From Mytilus edulis (taxonomy: Eukaryota): DNA of 64,000 nucleotides. Shown here piece by piece: positions 21,859 to 63,447 of the stretch (position 1 is the first letter of the stretch; every line of letters starts with the position of its first letter). The stretch is taken from assembly GCF_963676685.1 (NCBI RefSeq), contig NC_092345.1:88536001-88600000 (forward strand). The letters run 5' to 3'. A program made the position numbers and the translations under genes. The notes below the pieces were generated by a model, which was given only the letters and a program-made list of their open reading frames with translations, was not told where the DNA came from and did no database searches.

Positions 21859-22607
21859 CGTCCAACGTTTATTGTTATACAGTCAAATTCGAGAAAATGG
21901 TTCCGGAACAATTAGTACCGCTACTTCATGGTGAGACAACAACCACTTGTCAACTTTGATGTCAGCAACTGCTTTATATATTGTGAATTTACGACTGTGA
22001 AACCCTGTTGTTTGAAAGGTATATTTGAAATTCATATTTCTTATAGTGCGCATATCTACCGGGAAGCTCATACTACATCATGTAAATATGTTTGATGTTA
22101 TTTATTATTAGTGAAAGTCAATTTACAAATTTCAACTGAAACATGCACGGTCAGCATACCTGTGAAGGTGAATGTGTATTGCTTTATCACGTGACAACCT
22201 AGACATAGAAGGAATTTAATCGATCAACGTTCCGCACGGATGGAGATTTTTACAACTGTTGCCGGTGAACTGTAGTAGTATTTATTTGACATTCATTTAT
22301 GAAAACAAACTGTTATAAATATTTATTGATTTAAAAATTCATTGTGTTTTATTGTTTGAATATATTTTATCATCTTTACTGTATTTTACAGATTTGATTA
22401 TTGTTTGTGCATGAATAGAAGCACGCACCTGATTTAACAAGTTACGCACTAATAGTTACAGCAGCGACGTAAGAAAGCGACTTGCATTGACACAGACATA
22501 TGAGTAAGTTCATCATCATTACATCATTTTCATTTCATTCATGTGTATTGTCCTTGTTTTGTTTTGTTTATTTTGTGTTGTTTTTGTCGTTGGTTAAAGT
22601 TCAAGTG

Positions 22608-23747
22608 ATGGCTGAAGCGGAGTCAAAACAAGGTTTAAAAACTGAACCTAAGATTTCAGAAGAACACGTTCAGAAAATGATTGAGTTTTTGAATCATAAT
22701 ACAAGCTTTAGAGTTGTAACATCAGATGAGTTTGATAAATTAAGTAGTGAGAAGCATGTATCTTTTGGACATAGTACTCCTATAAGGGGAACTACTGCTC
22801 ATACTAAGCCTCCTTTGGCACCTGTTAGGTCTTCGTCTATAGCAAGAGTGGCAACTTATGCTGCAGGTTTTGGTAATAATACTACCGTTTCTTGTTCAAA
22901 CTCTTCATATGCAAAACCCAAGATACCTGTATTTTCTGGGGAAGAAAAAAGTGAAGTGTCTTTTGACGTATGGAAGTTCGAAGTTAAATGTATAATACGG
23001 GAAGGTAATTATACAGATACTATATTATTGCAGTGTATAAGAGGGTCCCTAAAAGGTAAAGCTAGGGGTTTATTGTTATCACTCCCAGATGGGGCTACAC
23101 CCACACAGATTATTGAAAAATTAGATGGGATATATGGAAATGTGTTCAGTAGTGAAGCATTGCTTCAAAAGTTTTACATGGAAACTCAGAAACAAGGTCA
23201 GTCTGTTGCTGATTATGGTATGAGACTTGAAGATATTGCCCAAAAAGCTGTTGAAAAAGGTCAAATTAGCTCACAGGCTAAAAACGACATGCTTAGATCA
23301 AAGCTGTGGTCAGGTCTCAGAGATCCCCTTTTGAAAAATGCTAGTCGTTATAAATACGATACTGTTGAAAAATTTGATCAGTTATTAAAAGAGATCCGAT
23401 CTATTGAATTGGACTTATCAAATTATGCCTCAGGTTCTGACAATAAGATTCAACATCAACCTGCGGTTGTTGAACAGTCAGGTATGCAAGAGATGATTAA
23501 GTCCATGAAGCTCTTGAATACTAGAATGGAATCATTTGAGGGAGAGTTAAAGAAATTAAAAGAAAGTAAACCTGATGATCATACAAGTTCGTCAAATAGT
23601 CAGTTTCGTGGCCAAGGTCGCGGGAACTATCGAGGGTCTGATAGAAGGGGTAGATTTAATAATAACCGTGGCTGGCGTGGCCGTGGTTATACAGGAAACC
23701 AACAAAACCAGAATTATAATTCTCAGACGAGGGGTTTAAACGGGTAA
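22608..23747 (+). CDS. gag: Gag, PNMA-like capsid with an RG-rich C-terminus (frame is also open from ATG 22500)
   Basis: FSGEEK...FDVWKFEV...IRGSLKGKA...Q..GQSVADYGMRLE capsid motifs; no CCHC knuckle. MAEAES at 22608 is the likelier start. Confidence 0.9.
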   Translation: MAEAESKQGLKTEPKISEEHVQKMIEFLNHNTSFRVVTSDEFDKLSSEKHVSFGHSTPIRGTTAHTKPPLAPVRSSSIARVATYAAGFGNNTTVSCSNSSYAKPKIPVFSGEEKSEVSFDVWKFEVKCIIREGNYTDTILLQCIRGSLKGKARGLLLSLPDGATPTQIIEKLDGIYGNVFSSEALLQKFYMETQKQGQSVADYGMRLEDIAQKAVEKGQISSQAKNDMLRSKLWSGLRDPLLKNASRYKYDTVEKFDQLLKEIRSIELDLSNYASGSDNKIQHQPAVVEQSGMQEMIKSMKLLNTRMESFEGELKKLKESKPDDHTSSSNSQFRGQGRGNYRGSDRRGRFNNNRGWRGRGYTGNQQNQNYNSQTRGLNG

Positions 23748-23806
23748 AGGTCTCGGTTGAGGGACAAACCAGAGACTTATATAGGCCTGAGAATGTGCCT
23801 AGTCCC
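23735..23806 (+). promoter_or_regulatory. -1 programmed ribosomal frameshift signal (slippery heptamer plus pseudoknot)
   Basis: T TTA AAC at 23735-23741 in gag phase. Stem AGGTCTCGGTT (23748-23758) pairs with AACCAGAGACTT (23767-23778); loop GGGAC can pair with GTCCC at 23802-23806. pol is in the -1 frame and open from the slip site. Confidence 0.85.
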
Positions 23807-26800
23807 AAACTTGTTGATACTTGTACGCAGAGCATTCTTGCTCAACGTATGATTGGTTTAGCAAATGAATCTTTTATTTACATTAATAATACAAAGTGTA
23901 AGGCTTTGATTGATACAGGGTCCATGATATCAACAATATCTGAAGGTATGTTGAATGAGTTAACACCTCCACCTGAATTGAAAAGTTTAGATGACTTTAG
24001 CTTATCAATTAGTGTGGCAGGAGGTACCACTTTACCGTATTTAGGTTACATAGAAGCTAGTATAAAGGTTGATTTTGTAGAGCAAGATTTTATGATACCA
24101 TTGTTGGTTGTCTCTCTTACTGATTATAACAAAAATGTACCTGTTATTATTGGTACAAATGTTATCAGATTGTTAGATTCATGTTCTATGGTTGGTAGAC
24201 AGCAAACTAACATAGACAAGATCCCAAGAGAGTGGGATATTGCTTTTAATTCTATCAAAGATGAAGCAATAGGTCAAGTTTACTCTACGAATAAAAATCC
24301 CATCAAGATCAAACCTTTATCTGTCTTAAATGTATCTGGTTTAGCAAGGTCTAAGACACCAGAAGCATGTACAGTAGTGACTGAGAGTCTGTCAGATGAC
24401 TTGTCAGATGTGTCAGTATGTCCACGGGTAGTAAACGTTAAGGGGTCAACTTGTCGGGTCCCAGTTAGAATATTTAACATGACGGCCAAAGCTATGGTCA
24501 TAAAACCTAAAACACACTTGTGTTCTCTGAACGAGGTTAAGGTTGTCCGTCATGTAGATGTACACAGTGCTGAAAGCGCTGTTGATGAAGAGAAAGGGAG
24601 TTTGTCTGATCAGGAGTTATCATCCCTAGGAATTAACTTAGAGAGTTTCGATGTTCCTGAGGATACTAAACTCAGATTGAAAGGTTTAATTAGCAGGTAT
24701 AGGTCTATTTTCTCCCAAGGACCCACTGACATTGGGCTCACAGATCTGATGGAGCACGAGATCCAGTTATCTGATGACAAACCCTTTAGACAACCCTACA
24801 GGCGTATTCCTCCAGCATTGTTCGATGAGGTAAGAGAACATGTACGTGAAATGCTGGAGGCGGGCTGTATAAGGGAGTCTAACAGTCCTTACGCCAGTAA
24901 CGCGGTTCTCGTGCGTAAGAAGGACAGTTCTTTGCGCTTCTGTTTAGATTTTAGATCTTTAAACAAGAAGACAATTCGGGACAGTTATTCTTTGCCTCGC
25001 ATTGACGAGACAATTGATTGTCTAGCTGGGGCTAAATACTTTACGCGACTGGACCTTCGATCGGCATATTGGCAAATGGGCATTAAAGAGTCAGACAAGC
25101 ATAAGACCGCGTTTTCGTTAGGTCCATTGGGGTTCTATGAATTTAATAGGCTCCCCTTTGGTCTGACAAACGCAGGGGCATCGTTTCAAAGATTGATGGA
25201 AAGATGCATGGGAGAAGCTCATTTACGTGAATGCTTAGTATTTTTAGACGATATTGTGGTATTTTCACGTAACATAGATGACCATTTTGCTAGGCTTGAG
25301 TCTGTTTTTAGTCGTCTTAAACACCACGGCTTAAAACTCAAAGGTAGCAAGTGTGAATTTTTTAAGAAGGAGATTAAATATCTTGGTGTTATAGTGTCCG
25401 CCGACGGTATCAAAACCGACCCAGAGAAAGTTATAGCAGTCCAAAATTGGCCAGCTATAAAGAGCATTAAGGACCTTCGTAGGTTTATAGGTTTCACTTC
25501 CTATTACAGGAAATTCATTAGAGACTACGCTAAGATTGCAAAGCCTCTTAATGACCTATTTCTTGGACACCCTACGAACAAGAAGAACCTTGGGTCTAAA
25601 CGAAAGAAGTCTAGTAAGCCTAGTCCTTGGAAATGGGGTCCCGAGGAACAGAATGCTGTTGATCTTATTATTGAAAAGTTGACAAACCCACCAGTTCTTG
25701 CATATGCAGATTTTTCATTACCTTTCATTGTAAACGTTGATGCAAGTGGTACCGGTTTAGGTGCCGTCTTGTATCAAGAACAGGAGGGTAAAGAACGGGT
25801 GATAGCTTACGCTAGTCGTAGCTTACGTGGCCCAGAGAAGTTATATCCAGCCCATAAAAGAGAATTTTTGGCGCTTAAATGGGCTGTAACTGACAAGTTT
25901 CATGATTATCTCTTTGGTAGCAAATTTACCGTTAGAACGGATAATAATCCACTTACGTACGTTCTCGGTAAAGCTAAATTAGATGCTACCGGCCATAGAT
26001 GGGTTGCTTCATTGTCAAACTATGATTTCAGCATTGTGTATAGAACAGGCAAGTCAAATATTGACGCTGACGCTCTTTCTAGACTTCCGTCCGATTGTAA
26101 AGAAGTTTTTAGTGACGTAGTTCAGGCTATTTGTAAATCTATAGTATTAACTCCAGATACAAACCCTGCTATTGAAACTGTATGTTTGTCACATGATATT
26201 CAGTTTATAGACAGCGATAGCGAGATTTTAGCCGATACATCCAAATTCGCTGATATAGATTGGACGTATGAGCAGAGACAAGATTCATGCTTAAGTAGAG
26301 TTATTGATTTAGTTACAACCGGTCATAGACTCACTAAGCGTCAGATGTCTCATGAGACGGATCTTGTCCGAAGATTATTGAGAGAATGGGATAAACTTTG
26401 TCTGAAAGATAAGGTTTTATATAGGAAAAGCTACATTAATCATGAAGCTGTGTTTCAACTAGTATTACCTTCTATTTACCATGAACTAGTACTGACTGCT
26501 CTGCACGACGATGTAGGTCACCAGGGGCGCGATCGTACTTTATCACTTGTGAAATCAAGATATTTTTGGCCGGGTATTGATAGAGACGTAGAGAGAAAAG
26601 TTTCGAACTGTCAGAACTGCATACTCAGAAAGTCGAAGTGCAGGAATTCTGCATCATTGGTAAATATATGTTCTTCCTACCCTTTGGAGCTCATTTGTAT
26701 AGATTTTCTAACTCTTGAGCAGTCAAAGGGAGGATATGAGAATATTTTGGTCATTACGGATCATTTTACGAGGTACGCTCAAGCTATACCTACGAAAAAT

Positions 26801-28081
26801 CAGTCCGCTAAAACTACAGCTAAAGCATTATGGGAAAATTTTATTCAGCACTATTCTTTTCCATCTCGATTTCACAGTGATCAGGGACGAAATTTTGAGG
26901 GTAAGGTTATCCAGGAACTGTGTAGATTAGCAGGCATAAAAAAATCTCGCACTACTCCGTATCACCCGCAAGGGAATGGTCAGTGCGAGCGTTTTAACCA
27001 GACTTTATTAAACATGTTGGGTACTCTTGATGATGAAAAGAAATCCAATTGGAAAGTGTATGTTGCGCCGTTAGTACATGCCTATAATGCAACAAAACAC
27101 GATACAACTGGATACAGCCCACATTATCTGATGTTTGGTTGGCACCCGCGGCTTGCCATTGATGCTTTTATAGGTAATCCAAACCAGTCTGTTACAAAAG
27201 ATCACTCTGCATACGTGAGTGATTTGAAAAAACGACTGCAGTTTGCCTATAGAACAGCTGAAAAATCAGCCGAAAGGACTGGGAGACGTCATAAAACGCG
27301 ATATGATTTGAAAGTCAGACAGTCAGTACTGGAGCCTGGTGATAGAGTTCTACTTAAAAATGTGGCGTTTAGAGGGAAACATAAATTAGAAAATAAGTGG
27401 GGTAAACAACCTTATGTTATAGTTTCAAAACCTGACTCTGATATTCCGGTTTATATCATCAGACAGGAACACGGTCGGGGCCGTAAAACAGTACATAGGA
27501 ATATGTTACTTCCCATTACTTCCATTCCCATTTTAAACCCTCAGTGTAGTGAGAACTCCCAAGATAAGAGAAATGTAGTTTCAAAGAAAGATTGTCCGTC
27601 TGTATTAGTAGACAAAGTTTTAGACTCTGATAAAACAGTGGACGAAATCACTACGGACGACCAAGTTGTTTCAATTACTTCATCTGATATTTCTGAATCT
27701 GAGTCAGAAGAAGAGTTTTTAGTGCACGATTGCCCGAGGCGTCGAGTAGATATAGTACTGCCTCTGAACCCTTTAGCGGATGAATTTCATCCGGGCATTT
27801 TGAATCTAGATGAAGTAAGTCAGCGATCTAGTAGTCCTGACAGTAGTATTGAACAATCTGATGGTCAGAGGTCAAGTATTTTAGATGTATCTGAGTTTAG
27901 CAACCCAGTTCCCGTCAGTAGTGAATCAGAAACCAGTCCTGATAATCAAACGTCAAGCGCCTCTGATAATCATGCGCCGAGCGCTTTAGATTATGTCCAA
28001 CCAGAGTCTGAAATTCAAGTGCGGCGGTCGAGTAGACAAGTGAAACCGCCAGTCCGTTTTCAAGATTATGTTAGATACTAG
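23735..28081 (+). CDS. pol: Pol polyprotein: aspartic protease, reverse transcriptase, RNase H, integrase
   Basis: ALIDTGS (PR); LPFGL and FLDD (RT); NVDAS...E...TDN (RNase H); H-H-C-C, IDF, SDQG, GQCERFN (IN). Uninterrupted. Confidence 0.97.
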   Translation, partial: FKRVKVSVEGQTRDLYRPENVPSPKLVDTCTQSILAQRMIGLANESFIYINNTKCKALIDTGSMISTISEGMLNELTPPPELKSLDDFSLSISVAGGTTLPYLGYIEASIKVDFVEQDFMIPLLVVSLTDYNKNVPVIIGTNVIRLLDSCSMVGRQQTNIDKIPREWDIAFNSIKDEAIGQVYSTNKNPIKIKPLSVLNVSGLARSKTPEACTVVTESLSDDLSDVSVCPRVVNVKGSTCRVPVRIFNMTAKAMVIKPKTHLCSLNEVKVVRHVDVHSAESAVDEEKGSLSDQELSSLGINLESFDVPEDTKLRLKGLISRYRSIFSQGPTDIGLTDLMEHEIQLSDDKPFRQPYRRIPPALFDEVREHVREMLEAGCIRESNSPYASNAVLVRKKDSSLRFCLDFRSLNKKTIRDSYSLPRIDETIDCLAGAKYFTRLDLRSAYWQMGIKESDKHKTAFSLGPLGFYEFNRLPFGLTNAGASFQRLMERCMGEAHLRECLVFLDDIVVFSRNIDDHFARLESVFSRLKHHGLKLKGSKCEFFKKEIKYLGVIVSADGIKTDPEKVIAVQNWPAIKSIKDLRRFIGFTSYYRKFIRDYAKIAKPLNDLFLGHPTNKKNLGSKRKKSSKPSPWKWGPEEQNAVDLIIEKLTNPPVLAYADFSLPFIVNVDASGTGLGAVLYQEQEGKERVIAYASRSLRGPEKLYPAHKREFLALKWAVTDKFHDYLFGSKFTVRTDNNPLTYVLGKAKLDATGHRWVASLSNYDFSIVYRTGKSNIDADALSRLPSDCKEVFSDVVQAICKSIVLTPDTNPAIETVCLSHDIQFIDSDSEILADTSKFADIDWTYEQRQDSCLSRVIDLVTTGHRLTKRQMSHETDLVRRLLREWDKLCLKDKVLYRKSYINHEAVFQLVLPSIYHELVLTALHDDVGHQGRDRTLSLVKSRYFWPGIDRDVERKVSNCQNCILRKSKCRNSASLVNICSSYPLELICIDFLTLEQSKGGYENILVITDHFTRYAQAIPTKNQSAKTTAKALWENFIQHYSFPSRFHSDQGRNFEGKVIQELCRLAGIKKSRTTPYHPQGNGQCERFNQTLLNMLGTLDDEKKSNWKVYVAPLVHAYNATKHDTTGYSPHYLMFGWHPRLAIDAFIGNPNQSVTKDHSAYVSDLKKRLQFAYRTAEKSAERTGRRHKTRYDLKVRQSVLEPGDRVLLKNVAFRGKHKLENKWGKQPYVIVSKPDSDIPVYIIRQEHGRGRKTVHRNMLLPITSIPILNPQCSENSQDKRNVVSKKDCPSVLVDKVLDSDKTVDEITTDDQVVSITSSDISESESEEEFLVHDCPRRRVDIVLPLNPLADEFHPGILNLDEVSQRSSSPDSSIEQSDGQRSSILDVSEFSNPVPVSSESETSPDNQTSSASDNHAPSALDYVQPESEIQVRRSSRQVKPPVRFQDYVRY

Positions 28082-28174
28082 TATTTTAATGTTTTAACCT
28101 TTGAATATTTTTTTATTGATATTTGGAATTTAGTTTTATTTCTATTTAGTTTCATTTTTGTTTGTTTCACAGAA

Positions 28175-28849
28175 ATGAATCAGCATACATATATTTATAC
28201 GTCTAGTAGAGGAAAAGTTCTAGAAGGCAAAGTTCGTTGTAAAACGTTAGTACGTGTAGTGCCTGGAGGAAAATTGGAAACTTTGTGCAAATATGCATAT
28301 GAGGATCTTAAAGATATAGACGGTCTGAAAATCGTGTATTTCATAGCTGGAATACCGGATATTTGTTCTTTAGAAAGGAATCGTAGATCAAATTATGAGG
28401 AATCATTTCTTAAAAGAACTGACAATAGTTGTTTTGAACATGCATTGAGACTAAAGAATACTATAGTAAATACAGAAACTAAATTGAAAAGTATAAATTG
28501 TAAGGTAGTTTTTGCTACTATTACAACTATGAGTTTCTGTCTTTGGAATTTACATAGATTGTCTATTGGAAAAACAAGTCATTTAAAGTATGAGAATGCA
28601 TACGATAGGATGCAGCTAGAACTTAACTCCATTATACAGGATGTAAATAATTTTATTACAGAATTTAATCATACAAATCATGTTATCACTCCATTTTTTC
28701 ATTCTCCTGTACATAAATGTAAGAGTGGAAAATTTAGATATTTGTATAACAGATTAGTGGATGGGGTACATCCTACATTTGATTTGGCAAGAATTTGGAT
28801 TGATCGTTTGTCAACGGCAATTCAAAGCAATGAGGAAAGATTTTTTTAA
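28175..28849 (+). CDS. ORF3 in the env position: SGNH/GDSL-hydrolase-like protein, 224 aa
   Basis: Block I IYTSSRG (GDS-like Ser), block II VPGG, block III FIAGIPD, block V LVDGVHP (DxxH). Lies between pol and the PPT; preceded by a strong splice acceptor. Confidence 0.8.
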   Translation: MNQHTYIYTSSRGKVLEGKVRCKTLVRVVPGGKLETLCKYAYEDLKDIDGLKIVYFIAGIPDICSLERNRRSNYEESFLKRTDNSCFEHALRLKNTIVNTETKLKSINCKVVFATITTMSFCLWNLHRLSIGKTSHLKYENAYDRMQLELNSIIQDVNNFITEFNHTNHVITPFFHSPVHKCKSGKFRYLYNRLVDGVHPTFDLARIWIDRLSTAIQSNEERFF

Positions 28850-49786: not shown

Positions 49787-50140
49787 GTAAGTTTCTGGGA
49801 ACTTATATATACACTTATGGTATAGTAATGGGGAAAAAAATGAAGCATCTTACTAGTATTTAAAATCTATGTTTTGTTGGGTAAATTGCTTTTTCTTTTT
49901 ACTGAAAACGTAAGATTTTCTGTGCAATTGTCTACAAGCAACCAATTTCAATAGTCTGTGACCACCTTGTTGGTTTCGTTGTTGAATCCATGAATAGACA
50001 CTTAAAATAAAGGTAATGAGAATTCACAGTAAACCACGGATCAATTTAACATCTGAAATAATATATTTTGACAACTTAATAAAGATAAAATATAATCTGT
50101 GAACAAGTGAATATTTCAATACCCTTTTTATCTTCCCCAG

Positions 50141-50328
50141 CTAAACCAAGTGATGTCCCACTATACGGAGACTGTAATGACAATGGAAGATGGTACAAGT
50201 TCAAAGCATTGTGGGAGGCTGATGACGGATGTAACACTTGCACATGTGTTGGTATTGGCAATTATCAAGGGCCTTTTATTTGTACACAAGGACTATGTAC
50301 CAACAAAGAATCTGCAGTTGTTGGTTAG
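50141..50328 (+). CDS. VWC/pacifastin-like protein, exon 4 (last)
   Basis: ttccccag|; C...WEADDGCNTCTC...CTQGLC; TAG followed closely by AATAAA. Confidence 0.85.
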
Positions 50329-52901
50329 AAATAGAATAATAAAATAAAAACCCAGCCGAATACGTATTGTAAGCAGAAATAAAACATGGAAAATGGTGTA
50401 ATTAATTCGGGAAAGTTTTTAATCTTCAAACAAAAAGTGCTGCCACTGTTGGGATAAACCAACTGCGTCCGTTAAACTGATTCTTTTTTCCGATGGTTTG
50501 ACGATTTTAACTCTTACTTGTCTCTAAAAATACCTACCTACTTCAAATGTATGTTTTGATGACACTTCCTGAAACCTGTTGTCTTTTATAATCAGTTTAT
50601 ATTTTTTTGAGTTGTCGTATTCAACCAACAGCTATGTCTACCTATCTTAGCTAGCTTCCTGTAGTAGTGAACACTTTTGACTTTTATCTTTTTCTTCAGG
50701 TAAGGGGACTGCATTCCGTTCTACTTGTTCTTTATATGGTGTTTTGTTACGTCCTTTACTTTTACAACATATGGCTTAGATAAGCAATGCAAGCAGAGAG
50801 GTTTTCGCTTATACGTAAGACGAATTCCCACCAATGTGTACTTGTACCAAGTTCGGCTAACTGGACAATGTGGTGTTTGTTGTTTGTGTTTGTACGCTAT
50901 TTTGTCGGATGAGTTTGTACTTTTTTGGTTTGGTAAGTATAGTTATACTGTCCAATATTTGTGGTTATGCTGTTGTTCGTTTCATGTACATATATACAGT
51001 CAGTTATCATAACCCCTTTAAACTATATCAAAACTCTATATGAGATATGTTTTTTTGTTTTTTTTTTGAGGTTGGTTATATAATGACTCTCATTTTAAAA
51101 TCAAATGTTTACAAATTTCTGAGAGGCAGCAAAACACAATTTTGAGGATTATTACCAAAATATCAACGACAGCAAAATTATTAGAAATATGTTTTTCTCT
51201 CTCTCAGTTCATCTTTGTTCAGTTTTCCAAACATATTTCAGAAAATTGAGAGGAGCTTCAGCCTTGGAACAACATCACAAGGAACACGTTGTCCCATAGC
51301 TGAGGTCCGCCAACTTTCCTCTAAGATATTAGTTAGGTTTTATGTCTAGTTATCAAAGTATAATACGCCATCAAATTGCAGAAAATAGACCAGGGTTTTC
51401 CCTCAAAACAATTTTAATCAACTTGTGTGTATTTGGTTAGACTTTATGATTGTACAAAAGATTAAGTTCGACTTTTTATTAAACGTTTATATTTTAACAG
51501 AAAACATAAGTGTGCTCCAATTTATTTGAAGATAAAACAGACAAGATTTATAGCATGATTTTTGGGGTTATCTAAATATTTTTGGCTAGCTATCTACGTT
51601 CCGAAGCCCGTGACTAACTTTTGAAGTGGCCTTACATAGACGGAATACTACATTGAACGCACCATGTGAACTGGAAGAAATCCACACTATCTGTTCATCT
51701 TACAAGTGAGGTAAGTACATAAGATTTAAGATATTTACTCCTCCACTTTTTTTAATTTCAATTGTAGCATATTTTTAATTTGGTCTTTTGAATTATTTAT
51801 AAAGAATGTATTAAAAGATCTTTCGGACACATTCAATTTTGTAATGCACACCATATTTGATACTCATAATACAATAATCAATATTAAATTCTTTTTATTC
51901 TATCTATAATACAATCACCATATTATATAACTTCCGCGCACATGACAGCATTCTAAGAAGTAGTGACATAAACTTAAACAGGAAATAAAAATGTATAAGT
52001 AGTGCATCCAGTCATGAACATCTAAATTGAGGTATTTTGGAATTTGAACGGTAAGTATTATTTCATATTCGGACTGTCAGTTCCAATATATAATTGTGTA
52101 CGTCGTATTTTTATTATCATGATTATGTCTGTGCAAGTTTCTCAAGCGTCATCCGCCGACTCTTTTTCATGGTTTGTTACATAGTAACACGATATATGAT
52201 AAAAATGGTAAATAATATTGCTACAAAAATTTGAAAAAATCTTTTGCGTACCGGAAATCTGATTGGTTAGCGAATAATAAAGATGAAAAAGTGTAATCAG
52301 AATTATGCATATTCATTAAAAAATATGAAAAGTTGTGATAGGATTGATCTCAATATTACAATGTTCTCTTGGTGAGTTCTAGAGCACCGTCCATTGGTTG
52401 ATCTTGCATGGTTGCAATGGGGATAATTCTCATTAATATCTGTTGCTAGTTCTGAGTGACCGCCCTTGATGACCTCTGCATTGTGGTGATGCAAAGTTCC
52501 TCACGGATGTGCATTTTTCATGAGGAGAACTACTAGTACAACAAAATAATAAGAAACTATATTTTTGTTCTATAATTTCCGGTTAATCCATTTTTATATT
52601 TATTTATATTTCAATCGACCTCATTACACTATATACACTTTATATTGTAATAATATCCTATTTCGCTAACATTTGAGTTAATATTTTTGTGTATTGTCAA
52701 TTTTCACTAAAAACTCGCATGTTTTATAAAAACAGGACAGTCTTTGTCCCTTTTAGTACGCAACTGAATAATGTATTATTTTATTGCCAAAGAATGAGAC
52801 AATCATCCACAGAAAAGTAAATGACAAGGATGTAAAAAGCTACAGTTTTAAACAACTACGACTTAAGTTTCGTTCATTCATTTTGCTCTAAATGTATCTT
52901 T

Positions 52902-53030
52902 CAGTGGCGGATCCAGCAATTGAAAAAAAGGGGGGGGGGGTTCCAATTTTATGCTCCCATTCAAATGCATTGATCGGCAAAAAAAAGGGGGGTTCCAACC
53001 CCCGGAACCACCCCTTTGGATCCGCCACTG
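52902..53030. mobile_element. 129-bp MITE
   Basis: 14-bp TIR CAGTGGCGGATCCA/TGGATCCGCCACTG, flanked by direct TCTTT on both sides. Confidence 0.8.
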
Positions 53031-53060
53031 TCTTTTGTTGAATATTATTAAGCCTATTAA

Positions 53061-53654
53061 GGTGGTATGGGTGTCTTCCTCCATCTTGGATTGTAAAAAA
53101 ACAGAGAACCAAAGGTCCAGATTTTTTATCAAGTTAGCAAAATTTGATGCAGGAATGCAAATATTTAATGTGAATTTTTATTTAAAAGAACTAATTCATA
53201 AGAATATAACTTATAAATATTGATATTTTTGCAAATGATGATTATTTTTGGTTGTTTTTAAAAATAAATTAAATTGGCATTTTAAGGGGAGGTAACTCTA
53301 AAACAGTGCATTTTCTGAAGGATTCTACATAGAATTTTCCTATTTTGTATTTTAGCCGGAAAAAACGTACGGTGACCCTATCTTTTCTTTTGATATTCTC
53401 AAAGCATTGTCTACAAGCTATCTTTTCCTTAAGTATTTAACAATTCTATCATTTTGTTTAGTTTCTAATCACAAAATTGTGTTTTTTCCTGTATAATCCA
53501 TACAAAATTTGTCATTTTGTCACGCCCTGTAGCTTGAGAAAATGCGCGGTGACCTATCATTTTTATAACATTTTTCAACATATATCAATAGATACTACAT
53601 TTTGGCAAAGTATGAACAAATTCTATCATTTTTAATTTAGACTCCCATACCACC
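53061..53654. mobile_element. Kolobok-type non-autonomous DNA transposon (594 bp)
   Basis: TTAA on both flanks; GG...CC termini; 16-bp TIR GGTGGTATGGG(T/A)GTCT. Confidence 0.8.
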
Positions 53655-53988
53655 TTAAGGATATATTATACCCATTTATCGTCTGTTTGGTTGTTACGAA
53701 TTAAAGCTCAAATTGATATCCGAATATGTTAAAAACAAGTTACCATTTGCTTCGATCCGATTAAAAACTTATGTACTAAGTATTACAATATACCTTCTTA
53801 TTTTCAATTTAATCATGTATTTTGGTTTTCCAAACTTTCTGCCCCGGGCGTAATTTACAGCATTTTTCCCTCATGCTCAGCATTTTTTGGTGTTGATCAG
53901 ACATAAGATTATTTCATTTTTAAACTGCAATACTTAATTCTCAAGTAGCAATTTTAATGGTTATAATGTGTTTTTTTTCTTCAGGAAT

Positions 53989-55938
53989 ATGTTACGATCC
54001 ATATCCACACACAACTTCATACACTTTATTAAGCCACAAAGATTAGAGTTCAAAGATGGCACCAATTATATAGTTGGTGGAAACTCGACTGGTAAATCGG
54101 CCATTTTTGAACTGATACGTAGAAGTTTGTCAAATGATATCAATACAACGTCATCCTCGTTCACTATTGATTCTAACATTGCATATTCAATCTGTCATTT
54201 CAAAATCCCAGATGGGATCAAGCAACAGTTTCCTTGCAATCCAACCGATATCATCTCTGGTCTCTTTGTGGAGAAAGCAAACAAAGGCGACGAAGGCCAA
54301 CTTTCTTATTACTATTACAAAGTTTTAGTAATGACAAAGGAGTTCAATAGCTTAGAAATATTAATAACTAGATTTGAAGGGTTACGTTCATGTAATTCAG
54401 ATCAATTTCATTCCCAATTATATTTGTATTATAATTTTAACAATGATAAAGTATCAGAGTCTATAAAAGATGTAATGAGAGAAGGCAACCATGATACCTA
54501 TCATAAAAGTATCCAGTCTCTTTTTGATGAAATAAAGCAAAATGCTATCTTTGATGAAAACATTTGCAACCAAGATAAAGTTGACAATCTATTCAAGAGC
54601 CTTGAAGATAGTTATGTGAGCGTCCTACCAATGCGTTCAATTGGGCCTTTACAGTGGACTAGAAGTGAAAAGAATTGTCACAGCGAGAGAGAGAACAACT
54701 ATGCAATTACATGTCAAAGAGCAGAGATTATAAATAATCTCCTAGACAGCGATAAAACTGACACATATCTTCACAATAAGTATCACACGTTGCTAGTTGC
54801 TCCATATAGATTTCAAAAAGAGGGAAGCGACGTTTTTATGTATAACGACGACGGAGCTACAATAATTAAAAAGCCCCTCTTAAAAACTCCCGAGGGCATA
54901 ATAGAGGCTGAACAGCTAATACTACTGTTATCACAAAGCAACTTGTTAACAATTACACTAGAAGAGCCAGACAGAGGAATGCACCCACAAATGATAACAA
55001 AAATGCGAGACTGGGTTTTAAAGAAAGTGAAGAATAAGACCGTTCTTGTTATATCCCACAATCCGTCCATTTTGGATCATGCAGTTCTTGACAGAACATA
55101 TATATGCTCAAAAAGTATCCAAAGTGGATATATTTCTCACTCTGTCATGAAATTCCCTGATGGATATAGAAAATATGGAAGAATTGAGGAAACGAAAAAT
55201 CTGTTATTTTGTGAACGCATTTTATTTGTAGAAGGATTTACCGATAAAATCTTCATTGAGGCAATTTTTGATGTCCTGATAAATGATAGTAAAAGGAACA
55301 ACAAAATCATTGGTCAGAAACAGATAATCAATACTGAATTGTTTAGGAAATACCTATCAACCATTCATGTCGCAGAATTGGTAGAGGGATGCGGAAGTGG
55401 ACCAAAAAAGATGGAATTTTGTGACAAATTACGACGGGAATGTTGCATTGTCTATGATGCTGACGTATTAAAAACATCACCAAAGAAAGAGACACTGTCC
55501 GAGCCTAGAATATTTATTTGGAAGGAAGGGGCACTGGAAAATGTAATCAATAAAGCTGCTATTCACATGCCCCAAGAAATCAAGGATAAGCTAGACATAC
55601 CTATTTCGAGACGAAATTTTAAGAATTGGAAAACTAGTTTAGTTGATAAGAGTGACAAGGACATTGCTTTATTAGCCAATGCCCTTCTTGATTCATCTGA
55701 CGAGATCAATAGGTTTTTAGAATTTTTACGTAAGATGATGGAAAATCCGAATATTGCTCTTAATATAACTAGATCGGAAAAAAGAAAACTGTCATTTCCT
55801 GACTGTAGTTCTAAAAGAATGACTGGAGAACAACATCCAGTTGAGGATCTAGAAACAATTGACGATCCGGAAATGGAACCAAGAACAGGAATTTCTCAAG
55901 ATTTCGATGATGTTGTTTTAGATGACGTCGAAAAATGA
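53989..55938 (+). CDS. OLD-family ATP-dependent nuclease-like protein: N-terminal ABC ATPase plus C-terminal TOPRIM, 649 aa, single coding exon
   Basis: MLRSISTHNF start typical of Rad50/OLD ATPases; Walker A GGNSTGKS; degenerate signature TPEG; Walker B/D-loop TLEEPDRGMHP; H-switch VISHNP; TOPRIM LFVEGFTD, YDAD and EGALE. Acceptor ttttttttcttcag| lies 4 nt before the ATG; AATAAA cluster near 56000. Confidence 0.88.
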   Translation: MLRSISTHNFIHFIKPQRLEFKDGTNYIVGGNSTGKSAIFELIRRSLSNDINTTSSSFTIDSNIAYSICHFKIPDGIKQQFPCNPTDIISGLFVEKANKGDEGQLSYYYYKVLVMTKEFNSLEILITRFEGLRSCNSDQFHSQLYLYYNFNNDKVSESIKDVMREGNHDTYHKSIQSLFDEIKQNAIFDENICNQDKVDNLFKSLEDSYVSVLPMRSIGPLQWTRSEKNCHSERENNYAITCQRAEIINNLLDSDKTDTYLHNKYHTLLVAPYRFQKEGSDVFMYNDDGATIIKKPLLKTPEGIIEAEQLILLLSQSNLLTITLEEPDRGMHPQMITKMRDWVLKKVKNKTVLVISHNPSILDHAVLDRTYICSKSIQSGYISHSVMKFPDGYRKYGRIEETKNLLFCERILFVEGFTDKIFIEAIFDVLINDSKRNNKIIGQKQIINTELFRKYLSTIHVAELVEGCGSGPKKMEFCDKLRRECCIVYDADVLKTSPKKETLSEPRIFIWKEGALENVINKAAIHMPQEIKDKLDIPISRRNFKNWKTSLVDKSDKDIALLANALLDSSDEINRFLEFLRKMMENPNIALNITRSEKRKLSFPDCSSKRMTGEQHPVEDLETIDDPEMEPRTGISQDFDDVVLDDVEK

Positions 55939-56776
55939 TTGAAAATGAAACTGTTGGAAGTATTTCCTATCACATGTGAAGTAAATTTATAGACAACAAA
56001 TAAAATAAAATAAAAATGAAACAAGAAATATGAGAGAAATTTTTAATTATTAATTCGGATTAAGTAAAATATAATAAACAGTTTAGGTCACCGTGCTATT
56101 TTTCAAGCAACGAGTCGTTCAAAATTGCTGACATTTGCTTATATTGTTCCTGAAAATAAATCTATGAGATAGAATTTTGAAATAAAAAAGAAGATAGTTT
56201 TTTTTATACGAAAATGAAAAGAAAAAAAATAGTGTTACCGATAAACTCATCATAGATACCAGGATTACAATTTTATATTTACGACAGACGTGCGTTTCGT
56301 CTACAAAAGATTCATCAGTGACGCTACTTGTTTTCTTGCTACAAGTAAAAAATAAAAATTTCCCTATCGGTCCAGCATAAATTTTGTACCAAAAGAGTTA
56401 CCTACCCTTATATGGCTAAGTTGAAAGTTTTCATTCTGAAAAACACAAATGTTTTGTATTTGATTAAACATTTTGGATAATACAATTATATACTCAGTTT
56501 TCCTTATATAAATAAACAGTCTAACCAATAGAGTGCAAATCTGTCTCCAATTTGCAGATTTGGACAAAGAGTTAGACCGATCTTGTACTGCAATTGTACA
56601 TTCCAAGATGACCGTATACCCTGAATTATCTTATCCAAAAATTTATTTGAAATTATGTTTAAGAATGAAAACGAATATTCTATAAATAGATAATTTTTAC
56701 AATCAATGATTTTAGTGACAAATTACCAATAGCAAAAAGATGTAAAGAATAGTGAGTTCGTGCACAATGCAAAAAA

Positions 56777-59700
56777 TAGCACGGCAGCTTTGTGAACAAT
56801 ATGCACATCCTGCTACAAGATGAAATTTGGCATAGACCTTCCTCAACTATTACTCTTTAATTTCAGATAGGGAGGCATTTGTAAAAAAATGTCTCACTTC
56901 CGGTAAAATCCAAAATGCCGGACATCATACTTAAATCAGCCCAGAATCAGAGGCTATAGTGTGTGAATATGTGTTTTTATCATGCTGCTATAATAATATT
57001 TGGTACAAACCTTTGTAATGTACTACTTTTGGATATATTATATAGATTAGATGTCTTTAAAAACCCTTCTTCCGGAAAAATCCAACATGGCGGACATTGT
57101 ACTAAAACAAGATTATTTTTTAGGGAGGGCGATTGAAATGTGTTTTGACGTATTGCTACTATCATTAAATTGTGCGGGAACCTTTCTTTGAAGCTGCTAA
57201 CGGATACAATGTACAAGACATATGTCTTTAAAACCTTACTTCCGGTAATATTCAAAATGACGGACATAGAAATATCATTATTTTATTTTGATATTCAACT
57301 TTTTTTCAAAATGTAAAGAAAATGTTGTTTTTTTTGTGCTGGTTATTAAACTTTTGGCTTTAAGTTATCCTCTAAACCACTTATTCTATTCTATAGTTAA
57401 TGTTTAAATACAAAGTTAAAACTTCCAGTAAATAAAACCAATATGGCGTAAATTTCAAAGATGAGTCCGCAGTCCATATCTTCGATGTAGAGTTTTGGAT
57501 AGATTGATTAAAAATAAAATTAAATAACTTAGGTACTAAAACATCTTTAAAATTACTGATTTATGTCCGCAAATACATGTTTATTCACAATCGGAGAGCT
57601 GATTTTCCTCATTTACAAAGACCGTGGTATTGTTTCTTACATAAATAATGTACAAGCTCTTGATAAGAGAAGCACAAATATGGCAGTGATAGGTGAGCTA
57701 GGGAGATATCCTTTATTTATTGAAGTTATAGTTAATATGTTTTCATACTTATCACGTTTAACAAGTACAGAGGACCAATTATTGTCTGAAGCTCTCCTTG
57801 TATCAAAATCCTTATCAAACCATAGTAAGAAAAGTTGGTTTAATTCTATAAGTTCACTAGCAAAATACTTAGACATAGATTTATCGCAAGTTTTTAATAT
57901 GAAATCAAACTTGAAAAGATTTATTTTAAACAAACTTAAATTAAAGTATAATAAGTTGTGGTATTCATCTTTAAACAATGACAGAAAAAATATGTCATTT
58001 GTGAATAAATTTAGAACATACAGACTTTTAAAGAGAAATATATATTTTGAACCTTATTTGGCTATAGGTAATAGGAATCTGAGAATTCAGATGACAAAAT
58101 TCAGAATTAGTAATCATGATTTAGAAATAGAGAGAGGTAGATACAGGGGACTTCATGCAATGGATAGAACTTGTAATCTTTGTAAAAAAGAAGTGGAAGA
58201 TGAACTCCATTTTTTACTTAAATGTTCATATTTGGAAAGTGAGAGAGTTTCCATTATTTCCAACATAGTTAAAAGTTACAAAAACTTTCACAATTTATAT
58301 TATCAATCACAATTTATTTGGCTAATGTCCAATGAAGATAGTCACATTTTTAATCAAGTAAGCAATTTAATTAATAATTTAAATGTTGTTCGAAAACAAC
58401 TATTAGAAACTTAGTGAGTTTATATATTTTACTATAAAAAGACAGAGGCATAATTTAGATATTTGTACAGTTTCTTATTGTAGGATCATAAAAGCACCAG
58501 GGGAAAAACCAGGATATTTAAATTCAGTTTCCTATTTTTTAGGATCACTGTATTTGTCAAAGTTGAAACATGATACATTTTATAAATATACATTAGTGTG
58601 TCTTTCTTTTCTCTTCGTTGTAATCATTGATTTAATTGTACTCAAATAATTGTAATCATTTTGTAATCATTGTACATAATTTAACTTGTGATTATTCTGC
58701 TTGTAATGGGCGTCTCTAATTGACAATAAAATATATTTGATTTGATTTGATTTGATAAGATGAAGAGGACTCACAAAGAGTTGTCCAAAAGGGTTCCAAT
58801 GAATCGTATTATCCCCTTTGCCGTTCATAAGCGTCTAGACTGGTAAGCATAGGAACTAATTCCAAGCTTGTTACTCATCCACACCTTCCATGGTATATTT
58901 CACGTTTTACATGCTGAAAAAACTAGACAGAGTCGTTCAAATAGCATCATAAGCGTCTGGACTAGTTAGCATAGGAAAAAAATCCAAGCTTGTTTCTCAT
59001 CCACACCCGCCATGGTATATTGCACGTTTTACATGCTAAAAACACTAGACCAAGTCGTTCAAATAGCATCAATAAGTCTTTTCTCTTCCAAAAACATGTT
59101 TTCTTGCTTCGTAAATAAAATTGAGAATGGAAAAGAGGAATGTGTCAAAGAGACAACAACCCGACCATAGAATAGACAACAGCAGTAGGTCACCAACAGG
59201 AAACCCCATCTGATAAGTTTGTTCGATCTTACTACAAAACCATGTATCGCTTTATCAATGACATTATCAAATCCATATCTGGTGATGTTGGCTGATCAAT
59301 CATCATTCTAAATCAATAAAGTCACATCTTCAAACACCATCCATGTCAACAACGAAGTTCCCTTTCAAGTAAACGTACATATGAAAGGTCAGGGATAGAT
59401 ATATATCTAAAGCTTTTCCCACTTCCAAATGCAAGCCAAAGTTCGTCTGCCCTATGTCACGGAATAACGAAACAGCAATGACAGCAACATCAGTATCGAC
59501 TGTTCGAGTCATGACTCAGTTAAGTCTATGTATCACTGTATCATACAGCAAGCTCATGTGAATAACAACTAAAACGTTCTTTCTTAATGTCGTCACCTCT
59601 CAGAAAACGTTGCCAATTTTGAGAATTTTTTTTTGACCATGGATTCGTCTATGTATTCCCTTTCCCCTAAATGTAGCTCTTGTTTCTTATAGCAGCCTTC

Positions 59701-62315: not shown

Positions 62316-63447
62316 TTAGTTCCGATGCAAAGACCGTATCAGTGACTCAATATTAACGCCAAAATATGCAATCTTTAATGACTTGACAACAGTATCGTAA
62401 TTATATCCCTTCTTAATAAGTCTATTCAAAGGTTTTGTAAGTTTCTGAGGTGAATACTGACATCTTTGTGCTTTATAAAGACTATTTCCATAAAAAATTG
62501 GATGTGAAATACCTGAACGTATTAGAAGTCTGCATGTTGAGCTATATTTACGAATGATGTCTTTATACCGATGATAAAATTTAGTAAATGTTTTGACTAG
62601 TTTGTGATATCGAAAACCCTGGTGTAATAAGATTTCAGTAATACATAAATTTCTCTCGTTAAAATCTAAAACATTGTTATATACATGGGCGAATCGTGCA
62701 AGTTGAGATATATAAACACCGTAAGATGGTGACAAGGGAACGTCACCATCTAAAAACGGATAATTATCGATAGGACCGTGAGATTGTTTTTTACGAACAG
62801 TTTTAGAAACTATATCCAAAATGTTAACGGAATTGGTTCTAGATATATTACCAATTCCCATGATATTATCATTTAGACCGAGAGGGTAAACTGTCTTGTA
62901 ATTTTTTAATCCAATTTAATTCAATTCTTTTCCGTGATCGTACAAACTTTGAATGCGATTCACCAGGCTGCTTATTTACTACTTTTAAAGGTTGAACTGC
63001 TAAATATTTAAAAGGATGGTTGTGCTTCTTAAGGTGTTGGTAAATGACACTTTTGAATTTATTGGGTCTTTTAAAACGATACAGATGTTCTTGAGTGCGT
63101 TTAGATAAATATCGTCCAGTTTCTCCTACGTACTGAATACCACACCCCGGTTTGTTTCATGTGAGTAAATAAATAATACTGTTTGTTTTTAAAGTTATAT
63201 CAGTTTCAAAATGTAAAGAAAATGTGCGACCATTAAACGTGGATCTTACCGTAATGTTGGTTGAAAGACGGGGACATGTAAGTCATTTTTTGGCATGACA
63301 CTTATCGATAGAAGGGTAAACACGATTCTTATTGTTAAAAACGTTAGTGATGGTAGTATTTTTAGATAACCGATTTTGAAGATTGAGACGTGTAGATACC
63401 CTTTGAACAAGTTTAGTATTTAGTAATTTTCCATTTCTAAGCTTCAT
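62316..63447 (-). pseudogene. Naiad ORF remnant: Zn-finger/GIY-YIG fused to the post-RT C-terminal domain
   Basis: Two in-frame TGA (63283-63285, 63157-63159); one +1 frameshift near 62895; in-frame deletion junction near 62775; TAA at 62316-62318. Confidence 0.85.

What the first reader, a model, noticed from the sequence alone, without database searches (positions are those of the whole stretch)
53989..55938. Intact OLD-family (ABC-ATPase + TOPRIM) nuclease built as an animal gene: candidate metazoan counterpart of a bacterial anti-phage effector
Seen: an uninterrupted 649-aa ORF with the ABC motifs (GGNSTGKS, LEEPDRGMHP, ISH) followed by TOPRIM acidic residues (VEG.TD, DAD, LE). It has a spliceosomal acceptor 4 nt before the ATG, candidate non-coding 5' exons ending in GTAAGT donors (51710/51711 and 52050/52051), poly(A) signals, host transposons on both sides, and a C-terminal tail with an NLS-like KRKL and an acidic end. 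Established: this architecture defines OLD nucleases (phage P2 Old, Gabija GajA) and resembles PARIS AriA/AriB, which act in prokaryotic anti-viral defence by cutting DNA or tRNA under ATPase control; it is not a standard characterised animal gene family. Inference: an ancient or horizontally acquired, domesticated stand-alone OLD that may act in innate immunity or genome defence in this mollusc. No UvrD/GajB-like partner is visible in the window.
Basis: partly seen in the sequence, partly recalled or inferred. Interest (0 to 1): 0.92.

Follow-up and report, generated by a model that had tools for sequence, protein, structure and literature searches.

The report
Mussel OLD-family ATPase-nuclease gene
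This is a real, transcribed and spliced blue-mussel gene for a stand-alone OLD-type ATPase-nuclease, the protein type bacteria use against phages; it belongs to a bivalve-wide gene family that a 2026 preprint has already described from sequence alone, and its function in animals is still untested.

Summary
Window 53989-55938 (+) is an uninterrupted 649-codon ORF. It has all the ABC-ATPase motifs and an OLD-type TOPRIM domain: Pfam PF20469 scores above its cut-off, and the best sequence and fold matches are Thermus OLD, Burkholderia/Xanthomonas OLD and GajA.

Transcript contigs from three public runs, each from a different study, join a non-coding exon ending at 52050 to the acceptor at 53984/53985. 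This removes a 1934-nt GT..AG intron, so it is a genuine animal gene. The genome is Mytilus edulis.

The gene is one of about 11 loci, roughly eight intact and three decayed, mostly in tandem clusters. A younger intact paralogue lies 19 Mb away (86% amino-acid identity, dN/dS 0.46). Relatives occur in mussels, oysters, scallops, pearl oysters, clams and a nemertean. Catalytic residues are invariant in 30 bivalve homologues. No UvrD/GajB-like partner lies near any copy, so it resembles stand-alone Class 1 OLD, not Gabija.

The family is not new. bioRxiv 10.64898/2026.08.18.745644 (August 2026) describes OLD-like genes in bivalves and other aquatic eukaryotes, in silico only. New here are the splice evidence, the family census in this genome, and a conserved disordered tail specific to two Mytilus clades. 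An immune role remains inference. The scan had not noted this family before on other DNA.

The parts
51924..51930 (+). TATATAA, a candidate TATA box about 45 nt upstream of the furthest 5' contig end
   Evidence: Read from the sequence. Its role is inferred, not tested.
51973..52050 (+). Non-coding exon 1 (the 5' end is a minimum; the true start lies between 51891 and 51973). It holds two 3-codon upstream ORFs.
   Evidence: X4 contig record 21 carries 77 nt upstream of the joint. Depth is above 0 only in the bin 51891-52087. Upstream ORFs were read.
52051..53984 (+). 5' UTR intron of 1934 nt with GT..AG ends. It carries repeat insertions at 52876-53663.
   Evidence: The joint 52049->53984 appears in contigs of X1, X3 and X4, from three studies and two organism labels. 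Unique intron stretches have depth 0.
53985..56132 (+). Exon 2, holding 4 nt of 5' UTR, the whole CDS and the 3' UTR. The 3' end is not mapped; the end given is the furthest contig.
   Evidence: Contigs tile 53984-55988 in four runs, and X3 record 16 reaches 56132. AATAAA lies at 55999-56014 and 56073-56078.
53989..55938 (+). CDS of 649 codons plus stop
   Evidence: The protein is identical to public protein P0001.
53989..55188 (+). ABC-ATPase head (aa 1-400) with a helical insertion at about aa 150-270. Motifs: Walker A K36, Q222, signature PEG 301-303, Walker B E324/E325, H332, H357.
   Evidence: Pfam. Invariant columns in A1. VIA-align Z 18-20 to SMC/Rad50 heads over residues 1-408.
55204..55764 (+). 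OLD-type TOPRIM (aa 406-528; E415, D419, D490, D492, E517) plus C-terminal helical bundle (aa 529-592)
   Evidence: PF20469. The family profile aligns to Thermus OLD 6p74 at 3.4e-13 with EGxxD and DxD in register. The domain model has pLDDT 84. Against 48,161 chains the top five are all OLD-family: 6p74 Z 9.3, 6nk8 9.1, GajA 8.7, retron Eco2 7.9 and Eco8 7.6.
55765..55935 (+). Disordered tail (aa 593-649) with conserved short motifs KRKLS (598-602) and TGISQDF (633-639) and an acidic end
   Evidence: pLDDT is below 50. The motifs are shared with the C9 clade in M. edulis, M. coruscus and M. galloprovincialis.

Best explanation
This is a bona fide nuclear gene of Mytilus edulis with two exons; the first is non-coding. 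It encodes a stand-alone OLD-family enzyme. The enzyme has a Rad50/SMC-like ABC-ATPase head with a helical insertion, fused to a TOPRIM nuclease with a helical bundle, and a mussel-specific disordered tail. It belongs to a bivalve-wide family that evolves by tandem duplication and loss. By analogy with characterised OLD enzymes (Thermus and Burkholderia OLD, GajA), the TOPRIM acidic residues would bind two metal ions and cut nucleic acid, most likely DNA. The ATPase head would control when the nuclease gets access to its substrate. The most likely biological role is defence against foreign or parasitic nucleic acid, meaning viruses or mobile elements. Shown here: the gene structure, transcription, fold, motif conservation and family dynamics. 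Inferred: enzyme activity, substrate, oligomeric state and the immune role. My confidence is about 0.95 for identity as an expressed OLD-family gene and about 0.45 for a defence role. The figure given below blends the two.
For: The ORF and motifs are confirmed. The splice joint 52049->53984 appears in three runs, and near-identical contigs (0-3 differences over 150-567 nt) tile the CDS. Full-length Foldseek top hits are GajA 8u7i at 3.7e-14, retron Eco8 and Thermus OLD. The family profile matches 6p74 at 3.4e-13 and GajA at 6e-10. The C-terminal domain alone ranks OLD-family chains first to fifth of 48,161, and Foldseek's top hits for it are the OLD C-terminal regions 6njx and 6nk8. Catalytic residues K36, Q222, E325, H332, H357, D419, D490, D492 and E517 are invariant in 30 bivalve homologues that share only 28-50% identity. 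The paralogue pair has dN/dS 0.46 with both ORFs intact at dS 0.15. Of 16 listed transcript variants, 7 are synonymous, 9 are non-synonymous and none creates a stop. The genome holds about 11 loci, with tandem clusters and three decayed copies, a birth-and-death pattern typical of conflict genes. The gene is stand-alone. Class definitions and mechanisms come from PMC12796447 and PMC6755086.
Against: There are no activity, localisation or infection-response data for any eukaryotic OLD-like protein. An archaeal OLD (Cran1, PMC12796447) acts in the cell cycle rather than defence, so the fold does not dictate an immune role. A dN/dS of 0.46 shows constraint but no positive selection. Public models of close relatives in M. 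trossulus (433 aa) and in another M. edulis assembly (380 aa) are shorter, so some alleles may be broken. The homodimer prediction gave no verdict.
Confidence: 0.6

Rival explanations
1. It is a housekeeping DNA-metabolism enzyme (repair, replication or chromosome handling), as shown for the archaeal OLD protein Cran1, and not an immune effector.
For: PMC12796447 shows that an OLD family member can act in cell-cycle progression. The ATPase head is structurally closest to SMC/Rad50 heads, with Z about 20. The tail holds an S/T-Q motif and an NLS-like motif, which would suit a nuclear protein linked to DNA damage.
Against: The family is absent from gastropods, cephalopods and most animals according to 10.64898/2026.08.18.745644. 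Copy number varies, copies sit in tandem clusters, and decayed copies exist. Divergence between clades is 30-45% identity. None of this is typical of an essential housekeeping gene.
Confidence: 0.2
2. It is cargo of, or was spread by, a transposable element, or it is itself a selfish addiction-type gene, rather than a domesticated host gene.
For: The gene is embedded in repeat-rich DNA. A repeated ORF lies 1.6 kb downstream, repeats lie in the intron and the 3' flank, and retroelements lie elsewhere in the window. The CDS has no intron.
Against: Homology between the two C2 copies covers only 53918-56066, plus patches to 56752. That is the gene itself, with no terminal repeats and no transposase or reverse transcriptase in the unit. 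There are only about 11 loci, mostly tandem. Each Mytilus clade has members in several species. The promoter exon lies 1.9 kb upstream and is not part of the duplicated unit.
Confidence: 0.07
3. It is an expressed but functionless relic drifting towards decay.
For: Three loci in the genome are already broken. Models in other assemblies are truncated. Constraint is moderate, with dN/dS 0.46.
Against: The ORF is intact at 649 codons, as is its paralogue at dS 0.15. All catalytic residues are kept. Non-synonymous change per site is less than half the synonymous rate. Transcript variants contain no stop.
Confidence: 0.08
4. It is bacterial contamination or an assembly mis-join.
For: The protein type is mostly prokaryotic. 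GC is slightly higher than in the flanks, 0.349 against about 0.30-0.33.
Against: The gene lies inside a 108-Mb chromosome-scale contig. It has a spliceosomal intron confirmed by transcripts and mussel repeats inside the intron. Homologues exist in more than ten bivalve genomes. A scan of 185,579 prokaryotic species genomes found nothing beyond a 45-57-residue Walker B match.
Confidence: 0.01

Closest known systems
Eukaryotic OLD-like proteins of bivalves (Magallana gigas OLD-like; bioRxiv 10.64898/2026.08.18.745644)
   Same: Same architecture and motifs, including the D-loop histidine. It is multi-copy, with a mix of intronless and intron-bearing genes, and has no GajB partner. The window protein is 27-30% identical to oyster members and sits in the same tree.
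   Different: The Mytilus C2 and C9 clades carry an extra disordered tail of 55-70 residues with conserved KRK[LI]S and TGx[ST]Q[DE]F motifs, which the oyster, scallop and C7-clade copies lack. The main text of the preprint does not mention Mytilus.
Class 1 OLD nucleases (phage P2 Old; Thermus scotoductus OLD, PDB 6p74)
   Same: It is a stand-alone gene. 6p74 is the best sequence-profile match (3.4e-13), with Walker B, H-loop, EGxxD and DxD in register. It is also the best structural match of the C-terminal domain, at Z 9.3 and 23% identity over 133 residues.
   Different: Overall identity is only about 13%. It is a eukaryotic gene with an intron. A longer helical region follows the TOPRIM. 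Its activity is untested.
GajA of the Gabija system (Class 2 OLD; PDB 8sm3, 8u7i)
   Same: GajA is the best full-length Foldseek match (3.7e-14) and the best PADLOC model (2e-14). Both have a helical bundle with the TOPRIM.
   Different: No UvrD-like GajB lies beside any copy. Class 2 is defined by that tandem partner (PMC12796447).
PARIS AriA/AriB and retron-associated OLD (Classes 3-4)
   Same: They share the ABC-ATPase plus TOPRIM modules. Matches are AriA 4e-10, retron Eco8 and Eco2 at Z 7.6-7.9, and AriB at Z 6.2.
   Different: The domains are fused rather than split. There is no retron reverse transcriptase or non-coding RNA context. The matches are weaker than those to Class 1 and Class 2.

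Membership tests
OLD family ATPase-nucleases | N-terminal ABC-type ATPase with Walker A, Q-loop, signature, Walker B and H-loop | tested here: met
   Pfam AAA_23, AAA_21 and AAA_15. K36, Q222, G303, E325 and H357 are invariant in 30 homologues. Z 18-20 to SMC/Rad50 heads.
OLD family ATPase-nucleases | C-terminal TOPRIM with the conserved glutamate, DxD and second-metal acidic residues | tested here: met
   PF20469 scores above its cut-off. E415, D419, D490, D492 and E517 are conserved. They align to 6p74 and GajA. OLD chains rank first to fifth of 48,161 for the domain model.
OLD family ATPase-nucleases | Helical insertion in the ATPase that mediates dimerisation | tested here: inconclusive
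   The model shows helices at 157-207 and 234-269 in the expected place. The homodimer test of aa 1-400 gave no verdict.
OLD family ATPase-nucleases | ATPase and metal-dependent nuclease activity | not testable with these tools
   This needs recombinant protein.
Class 1 OLD (stand-alone) | Stand-alone gene without a conserved partner (PMC12796447) | tested here: met
   No other non-repeat ORF of 150 aa or more lies within 25 kb. The paralogue shares only the gene itself.
Gabija (Class 2 OLD, GajA+GajB) | Adjacent UvrD/PcrA-like helicase GajB | tested here: not met
   PF00580 matches in the genome lie only on C1 and C8, with none near the OLD-like loci on C2, C6, C7 and C9.
PARIS (Class 4, AriA/AriB) | ATPase and TOPRIM encoded as separate adjacent genes | tested here: not met
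   A single fused ORF. AriB structural match is only Z 6.2.
Retron-associated OLD (Class 3) | Linked retron reverse transcriptase and non-coding RNA | not tested
   I ran no search for a retron reverse transcriptase or its non-coding RNA. The only large ORFs elsewhere in the window lie at 22500-28849, which a first-reader note calls a Gypsy element. NCBI names one clam homologue 'retron Vc95 probable ATPase-like', by similarity only.
Eukaryotic OLD-like family (preprint 10.64898/2026.08.18.745644) | Eukaryotic nuclear gene with ABC-ATPase plus TOPRIM and a D-loop histidine, found in bivalves | tested here: met
   Splice evidence. H332 is invariant. It clusters with oyster, scallop, pearl-oyster and clam proteins. 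A nemertean homologue was also recovered.

The most novel reading that the evidence does not exclude
In mussels a bacterial-type OLD nuclease has been rewired into a nuclear, signal-controlled restriction factor. The Mytilus-specific tail would supply nuclear import (KRKLS) and kinase control (the RKxS and S/T-Q-acidic motifs). The ATP-gated TOPRIM nuclease would then be released against DNA viruses or active retroelements when DNA-damage-type or infection signalling fires. This would be the first animal OLD-based immune effector with a regulatory mechanism of eukaryotic origin.
Probability: 0.12. Interest if true: 0.8.

Novelty: new member of a known kind. Interest (0 to 1): 0.5.

Why it matters
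OLD nucleases are core parts of several bacterial anti-phage systems: P2 Old, Gabija, PARIS and some retrons. Whether animals kept or re-acquired this module as an immune effector is an open question in the study of immune modules shared between bacteria and animals. This locus offers a clean test case. It is an expressed single-CDS gene with every catalytic residue intact and a recent paralogue for comparison. It comes from a species whose haemocytes can be challenged experimentally. The value is tempered because the family-level discovery has already been posted, so what remains is experimental proof rather than discovery.

Tried and rejected
- **Homodimer test.** Complex prediction on two copies of aa 1-400 returned no verdict (score 0.02). 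It is not evidence either way.
- **Prokaryotic genomes.** A scan of 185,579 species genomes with the family alignment found only two Flavobacteriales MAG hits, covering 45-57 residues around Walker B. No close donor was identified.
- **Viral contigs.** The scan gave one weak Walker A match in a 433-kb contig. There is no sign of a viral source.
- **Fused domains.** A Pfam scan of ten longer family members (724-968 aa) for fused signalling domains found only the ATPase and TOPRIM, plus one sub-threshold RhoGEF hit in the nemertean protein.
- **Transposon ends.** A repeat search over 50000-58000 found no terminal or inverted repeats bounding the gene.
- **Orthologue DNA.** I could not fetch orthologue DNA from M. 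coruscus, M. trossulus or the other M. edulis assembly, so there are no orthologue-based dN/dS or site tests, and no check of whether the shorter models are truly truncated.
- **Literature.** A search for 'retron Vc95' found nothing. A mixed search for OLD family with invertebrate names gave nothing relevant. Krishnan et al. 2020 is not held, so its statement is cited only through the preprint. The preprint's supplementary tables are not held.
- **Protein atlas.** It listed only prokaryotic OLD-like clusters.
- **Presence/absence among individuals.** This could not be tested because the single read-laying run was used for the splice question.
Full report
**Observation.** The window holds one long open frame at 53968-55938 (+). 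From the first ATG at 53989 it encodes 649 residues. Pfam reports AAA_23 (5-256), AAA_21 (260-363) and the OLD-like TOPRIM domain PF20469 (406-492; 27.9 bits against a cut-off of 23.2). The anti-phage model library ranks GajA first (2e-14), then Old (7e-11) and AriA (4e-10). NCBIfam has no family-level hit above its cut-offs. A single-sequence search of PDB sequences sees only generic ABC-ATPase similarity.

**Whose gene it is.** The window is G000:C2:88536001-88600000 of a 1.37-Gb genome. A paralogue on C9 is identical to a protein that NCBI labels Mytilus edulis, and the C9 contig length equals that protein's contig length. The genome is therefore M. edulis. The window protein is already in the public collection (P0001).

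**Gene structure and expression.**
- I laid contigs of four public runs from four studies and two organism labels on 51300-57200.
- Three runs hold a contig that joins 52049 to 53984, skipping 1934 nt with GT..AG ends.
- These contigs differ from the window at only 1-3 positions over 160-567 nt. The paralogue has no homology to the upstream exon. The joint therefore belongs to this locus.
- Unique intron stretches have zero depth, while contigs tile 53984-55988. This pattern identifies the runs as transcript assemblies.
The second proposed donor, 51710/51711, has no support.
- The longest upstream arm is 77 nt, reaching about 51973. A TATATAA sits at 51924-51930.
- The non-coding exon contains two three-codon upstream ORFs.
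- AATAAA signals lie at 55999-56014 and 56073-56078, but the 3' end is not mapped.
- Other contigs about 8-9% divergent, for example 13 differences in 150 nt, match the divergence expected of the paralogue. It is probably transcribed too.

**Fold.**
- An AlphaFold2 model built on 30 homologues has mean pLDDT 77.8 and pTM 0.79. Residues 593-649 are disordered.
- Foldseek against the PDB ranks GajA first (8u7i, 3.7e-14; 8sm3), followed by retron Eco8 OLD-type effectors and Thermus scotoductus OLD (6p74), all over about 650 columns.
- A second alignment pass shows residues 1-408 to be a Rad50/SMC-type head, with Z 18-20.
- Foldseek's only hits for that domain at E <= 0.001 are the C-terminal regions of Xanthomonas and Burkholderia OLD.
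- An unbiased alignment of the domain to 48,161 representative chains puts OLD-family proteins in the first five places. These are 6p74 at Z 9.3, 6nk8 at 9.1, GajA at 8.7, retron Eco2 at 7.9 and Eco8 at 7.6. AriB scores 6.2 and generic Rossmann-like folds below that.
- A profile of the family matches the 6p74 sequence at 3.4e-13 and GajA at 6e-10, with Walker B, H-loop, EGxxD and DxD in register.

**Conservation.** In 30 bivalve homologues, 28-50% identical to the window protein apart from one close orthologue at 77%, the invariant columns include G30, G35, K36, Q222, G303, E325, H332, H357, G416, D419, D490, D492 and E517. E415 is conserved in at least 90%. This is the full catalytic set expected from work on Class 1 and Class 2 OLD enzymes (PMC6755086; PMC12796447).

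**Family in this genome.**
- Protein and profile searches find about 11 loci.
- C2 holds two intact copies, this one and one at 107.50 Mb.
- C9 holds a cluster at 46.925, 46.939 (broken) and 46.957 Mb.
- C7 holds a cluster at 3.190 (truncated), 3.209 and 3.222 Mb, and a pair at 7.681 and 7.700 Mb.
- C6 holds a broken copy at 25.797 Mb.
- In a maximum-likelihood tree of 37 sequences, the window gene pairs with the C2 paralogue (SH-aLRT 96). An M. coruscus protein is their sister (100). This C2 clade is sister to the C9 clade. The C7 3.2-Mb clade groups with oyster sequences.
- The family is therefore old in bivalves and expands locally.

**The recent duplication.** The two C2 copies share DNA only from 53918 to 56066 (91% identity), plus patches to 56752. 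That is the coding exon, 67 nt of intron and the 3' flank, and not the promoter exon. Nei-Gojobori estimates give dS 0.149, dN 0.068 and dN/dS 0.46. The lowest value, 0.28, falls in the Walker B/H-loop half of the ATPase. Sixteen transcript variants listed in the CDS split into 7 synonymous and 9 non-synonymous, with no stop. This indicates purifying selection of moderate strength.

**Distribution.**
- Named relatives come from Mytilus (five species), Mizuhopecten, Pecten, Argopecten, Pinctada, Ostrea, Crassostrea/Magallana and Saccostrea.
- They also come from the heterodont clams Mercenaria and Ruditapes and from the nemertean Tubulanus.
- An exhaustive HMMER pass over 1.84 billion representative proteins gives only 277 hits at E <= 0.001.
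- Scans of prokaryotic species genomes and viral contigs find nothing beyond short Walker-motif matches.
- The bivalve proteins are therefore far from any sampled prokaryotic OLD, and I can say nothing about a donor.

**Partner genes and mobile elements.**
- Besides this gene, the window has ORFs of 150 aa or more at three places. These are a block at 22500-28849, which a first-reader note calls a Gypsy element and which I did not check; the ORF at 57563-58414; and one at 62316-62861 on the minus strand. The last two have no Pfam match.
- The 57563-58414 ORF is a highly repeated element piece, with more than 9000 first-look candidates in the genome.
- UvrD-helicase domain matches lie only on C1 and C8.
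- No terminal or inverted repeats bound the gene.
- Longer family members carry no extra recognised domains.
- The gene is stand-alone, which is the defining context of Class 1 OLD as summarised in PMC12796447. It fails the defining feature of Gabija.

**Prior knowledge.** A preprint posted on 19 August 2026 (10.64898/2026.08.18.745644) reports OLD-like genes in the following groups:
- SAR protists, Capsaspora and chytrids;
- Placozoa, Cnidaria and Rotifera;
- Nemertea and bivalves (absent from gastropods and cephalopods);
- Hemichordata and Cephalochordata.

For Magallana gigas it describes multiple copies with and without introns, and AlphaFold3 homodimer models on DNA. It found no eukaryotic GajB. 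It states that Krishnan et al. 2020 had already noted OLD transfers to Capsaspora and Crassostrea; I could not read that paper. The preprint is computational only. Its main text does not mention Mytilus, transposons or infection response. No other paper in the searchable library treats the subject. At the family level the finding is therefore already known. This particular gene is an undescribed member.

**What is added here.**
1. Direct transcript evidence for a spliced 5' UTR and an intron-free CDS at this locus.
2. A census and tree of the M. edulis family, with a dated recent duplication under constraint.
3. A tail of 55-70 residues found only in the Mytilus C2 and C9 clades. It is disordered in the model. 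It keeps KRK[LI]S, E[DE]L[EN]T[IL] and TGx[ST]Q[DE]F across clades that are otherwise about 43% identical, and across M. edulis, M. coruscus and M. galloprovincialis. Oyster, scallop and C7-clade proteins stop right after the helical bundle. Reading these motifs as a nuclear import signal with basophilic-kinase and S/T-Q kinase sites is my speculation from general knowledge of such motifs. It is not a result.

**Mechanism.** From established work on the family (PMC6755086; PMC12796447 and the studies it reviews), the TOPRIM acidic residues bind two metals for phosphodiester cleavage. The ATPase head governs oligomerisation and the nuclease's access to substrate. In GajA, ATP binding holds the nuclease closed until nucleotides fall. 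In Cran1, an active ATPase is required for cutting. The mussel protein keeps every residue needed for both activities, so an ATP-controlled nuclease is the most likely reading. Which way ATP acts, what the substrate is and what triggers the enzyme are all unknown. A defence role is favoured by the patchy taxonomic range, tandem expansion, decayed copies and fast divergence. A housekeeping role like Cran1's is the main rival.

**Verdict.** Interest is moderate, at 0.5.

Noticed in passing
window 55765-55935 (aa 593-649): The disordered tail carries short motifs KRK[LI]S, E[DE]L[EN]T[IL] and TGx[ST]Q[DE]F. These are conserved between the Mytilus C2 and C9 OLD-like clades in three species. They are absent from the C7-clade, oyster and scallop proteins. 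This may be a lineage-specific regulatory or localisation tail.
   Followed up: partly
window 55931: Transcript contigs of runs X3 and X5 lack one A of the A-run just before the stop. This would change only the last residues and give an ending like the paralogue's (...ND). It is probably a harmless length polymorphism.
   Followed up: partly
window 51973-52050: The non-coding first exon holds two three-codon upstream ORFs (ATG TAT AAG TAG and ATG AAC ATC TAA). A TATATAA lies at 51924-51930. Translational control is possible but untested.
   Followed up: no
window 52876-53663 and 56225-56421: These short repeats have very high summed contig depth in all four transcript runs, in the hundreds to tens of thousands. 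The stretch near 52903-53031 has G/C runs flanked by a 13-nt inverted repeat (CAGTGGCGGATCC ... GGATCCGCCACTG). They look like abundant transcribed SINE- or MITE-type elements.
   Followed up: no
window 57563-58414 (+): This 283-codon ORF has no Pfam match but more than 9000 first-look candidates genome-wide, often inside open frames of 1000-1200 aa. It is a fragment of a very abundant mobile element.
   Followed up: partly
G000:C1:42886585-43213590: Four UvrD-helicase-domain matches with open frames of 317-468 aa cluster within 330 kb on C1, and two more lie at C1:78.16-78.27 Mb. They are unrelated to the OLD-like loci, and I did not determine what they are.
   Followed up: no
P0003 (M. trossulus, 433 aa) and P0004 (another M. 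edulis assembly, 380 aa): Public models of the closest relatives are shorter. P0003 departs from the family right after the TOPRIM EGxxD motif. P0004 ends at residue 279 and has an unrelated 95-residue N-terminal extension. These are either broken alleles or gene-model errors.
   Followed up: partly
G000:C2:107496204-107498147 (L002): The intact 650-codon paralogue shares no upstream exon with the window gene. Contigs 8-9% divergent from the window suggest it is transcribed as well, presumably from a different promoter.
   Followed up: partly
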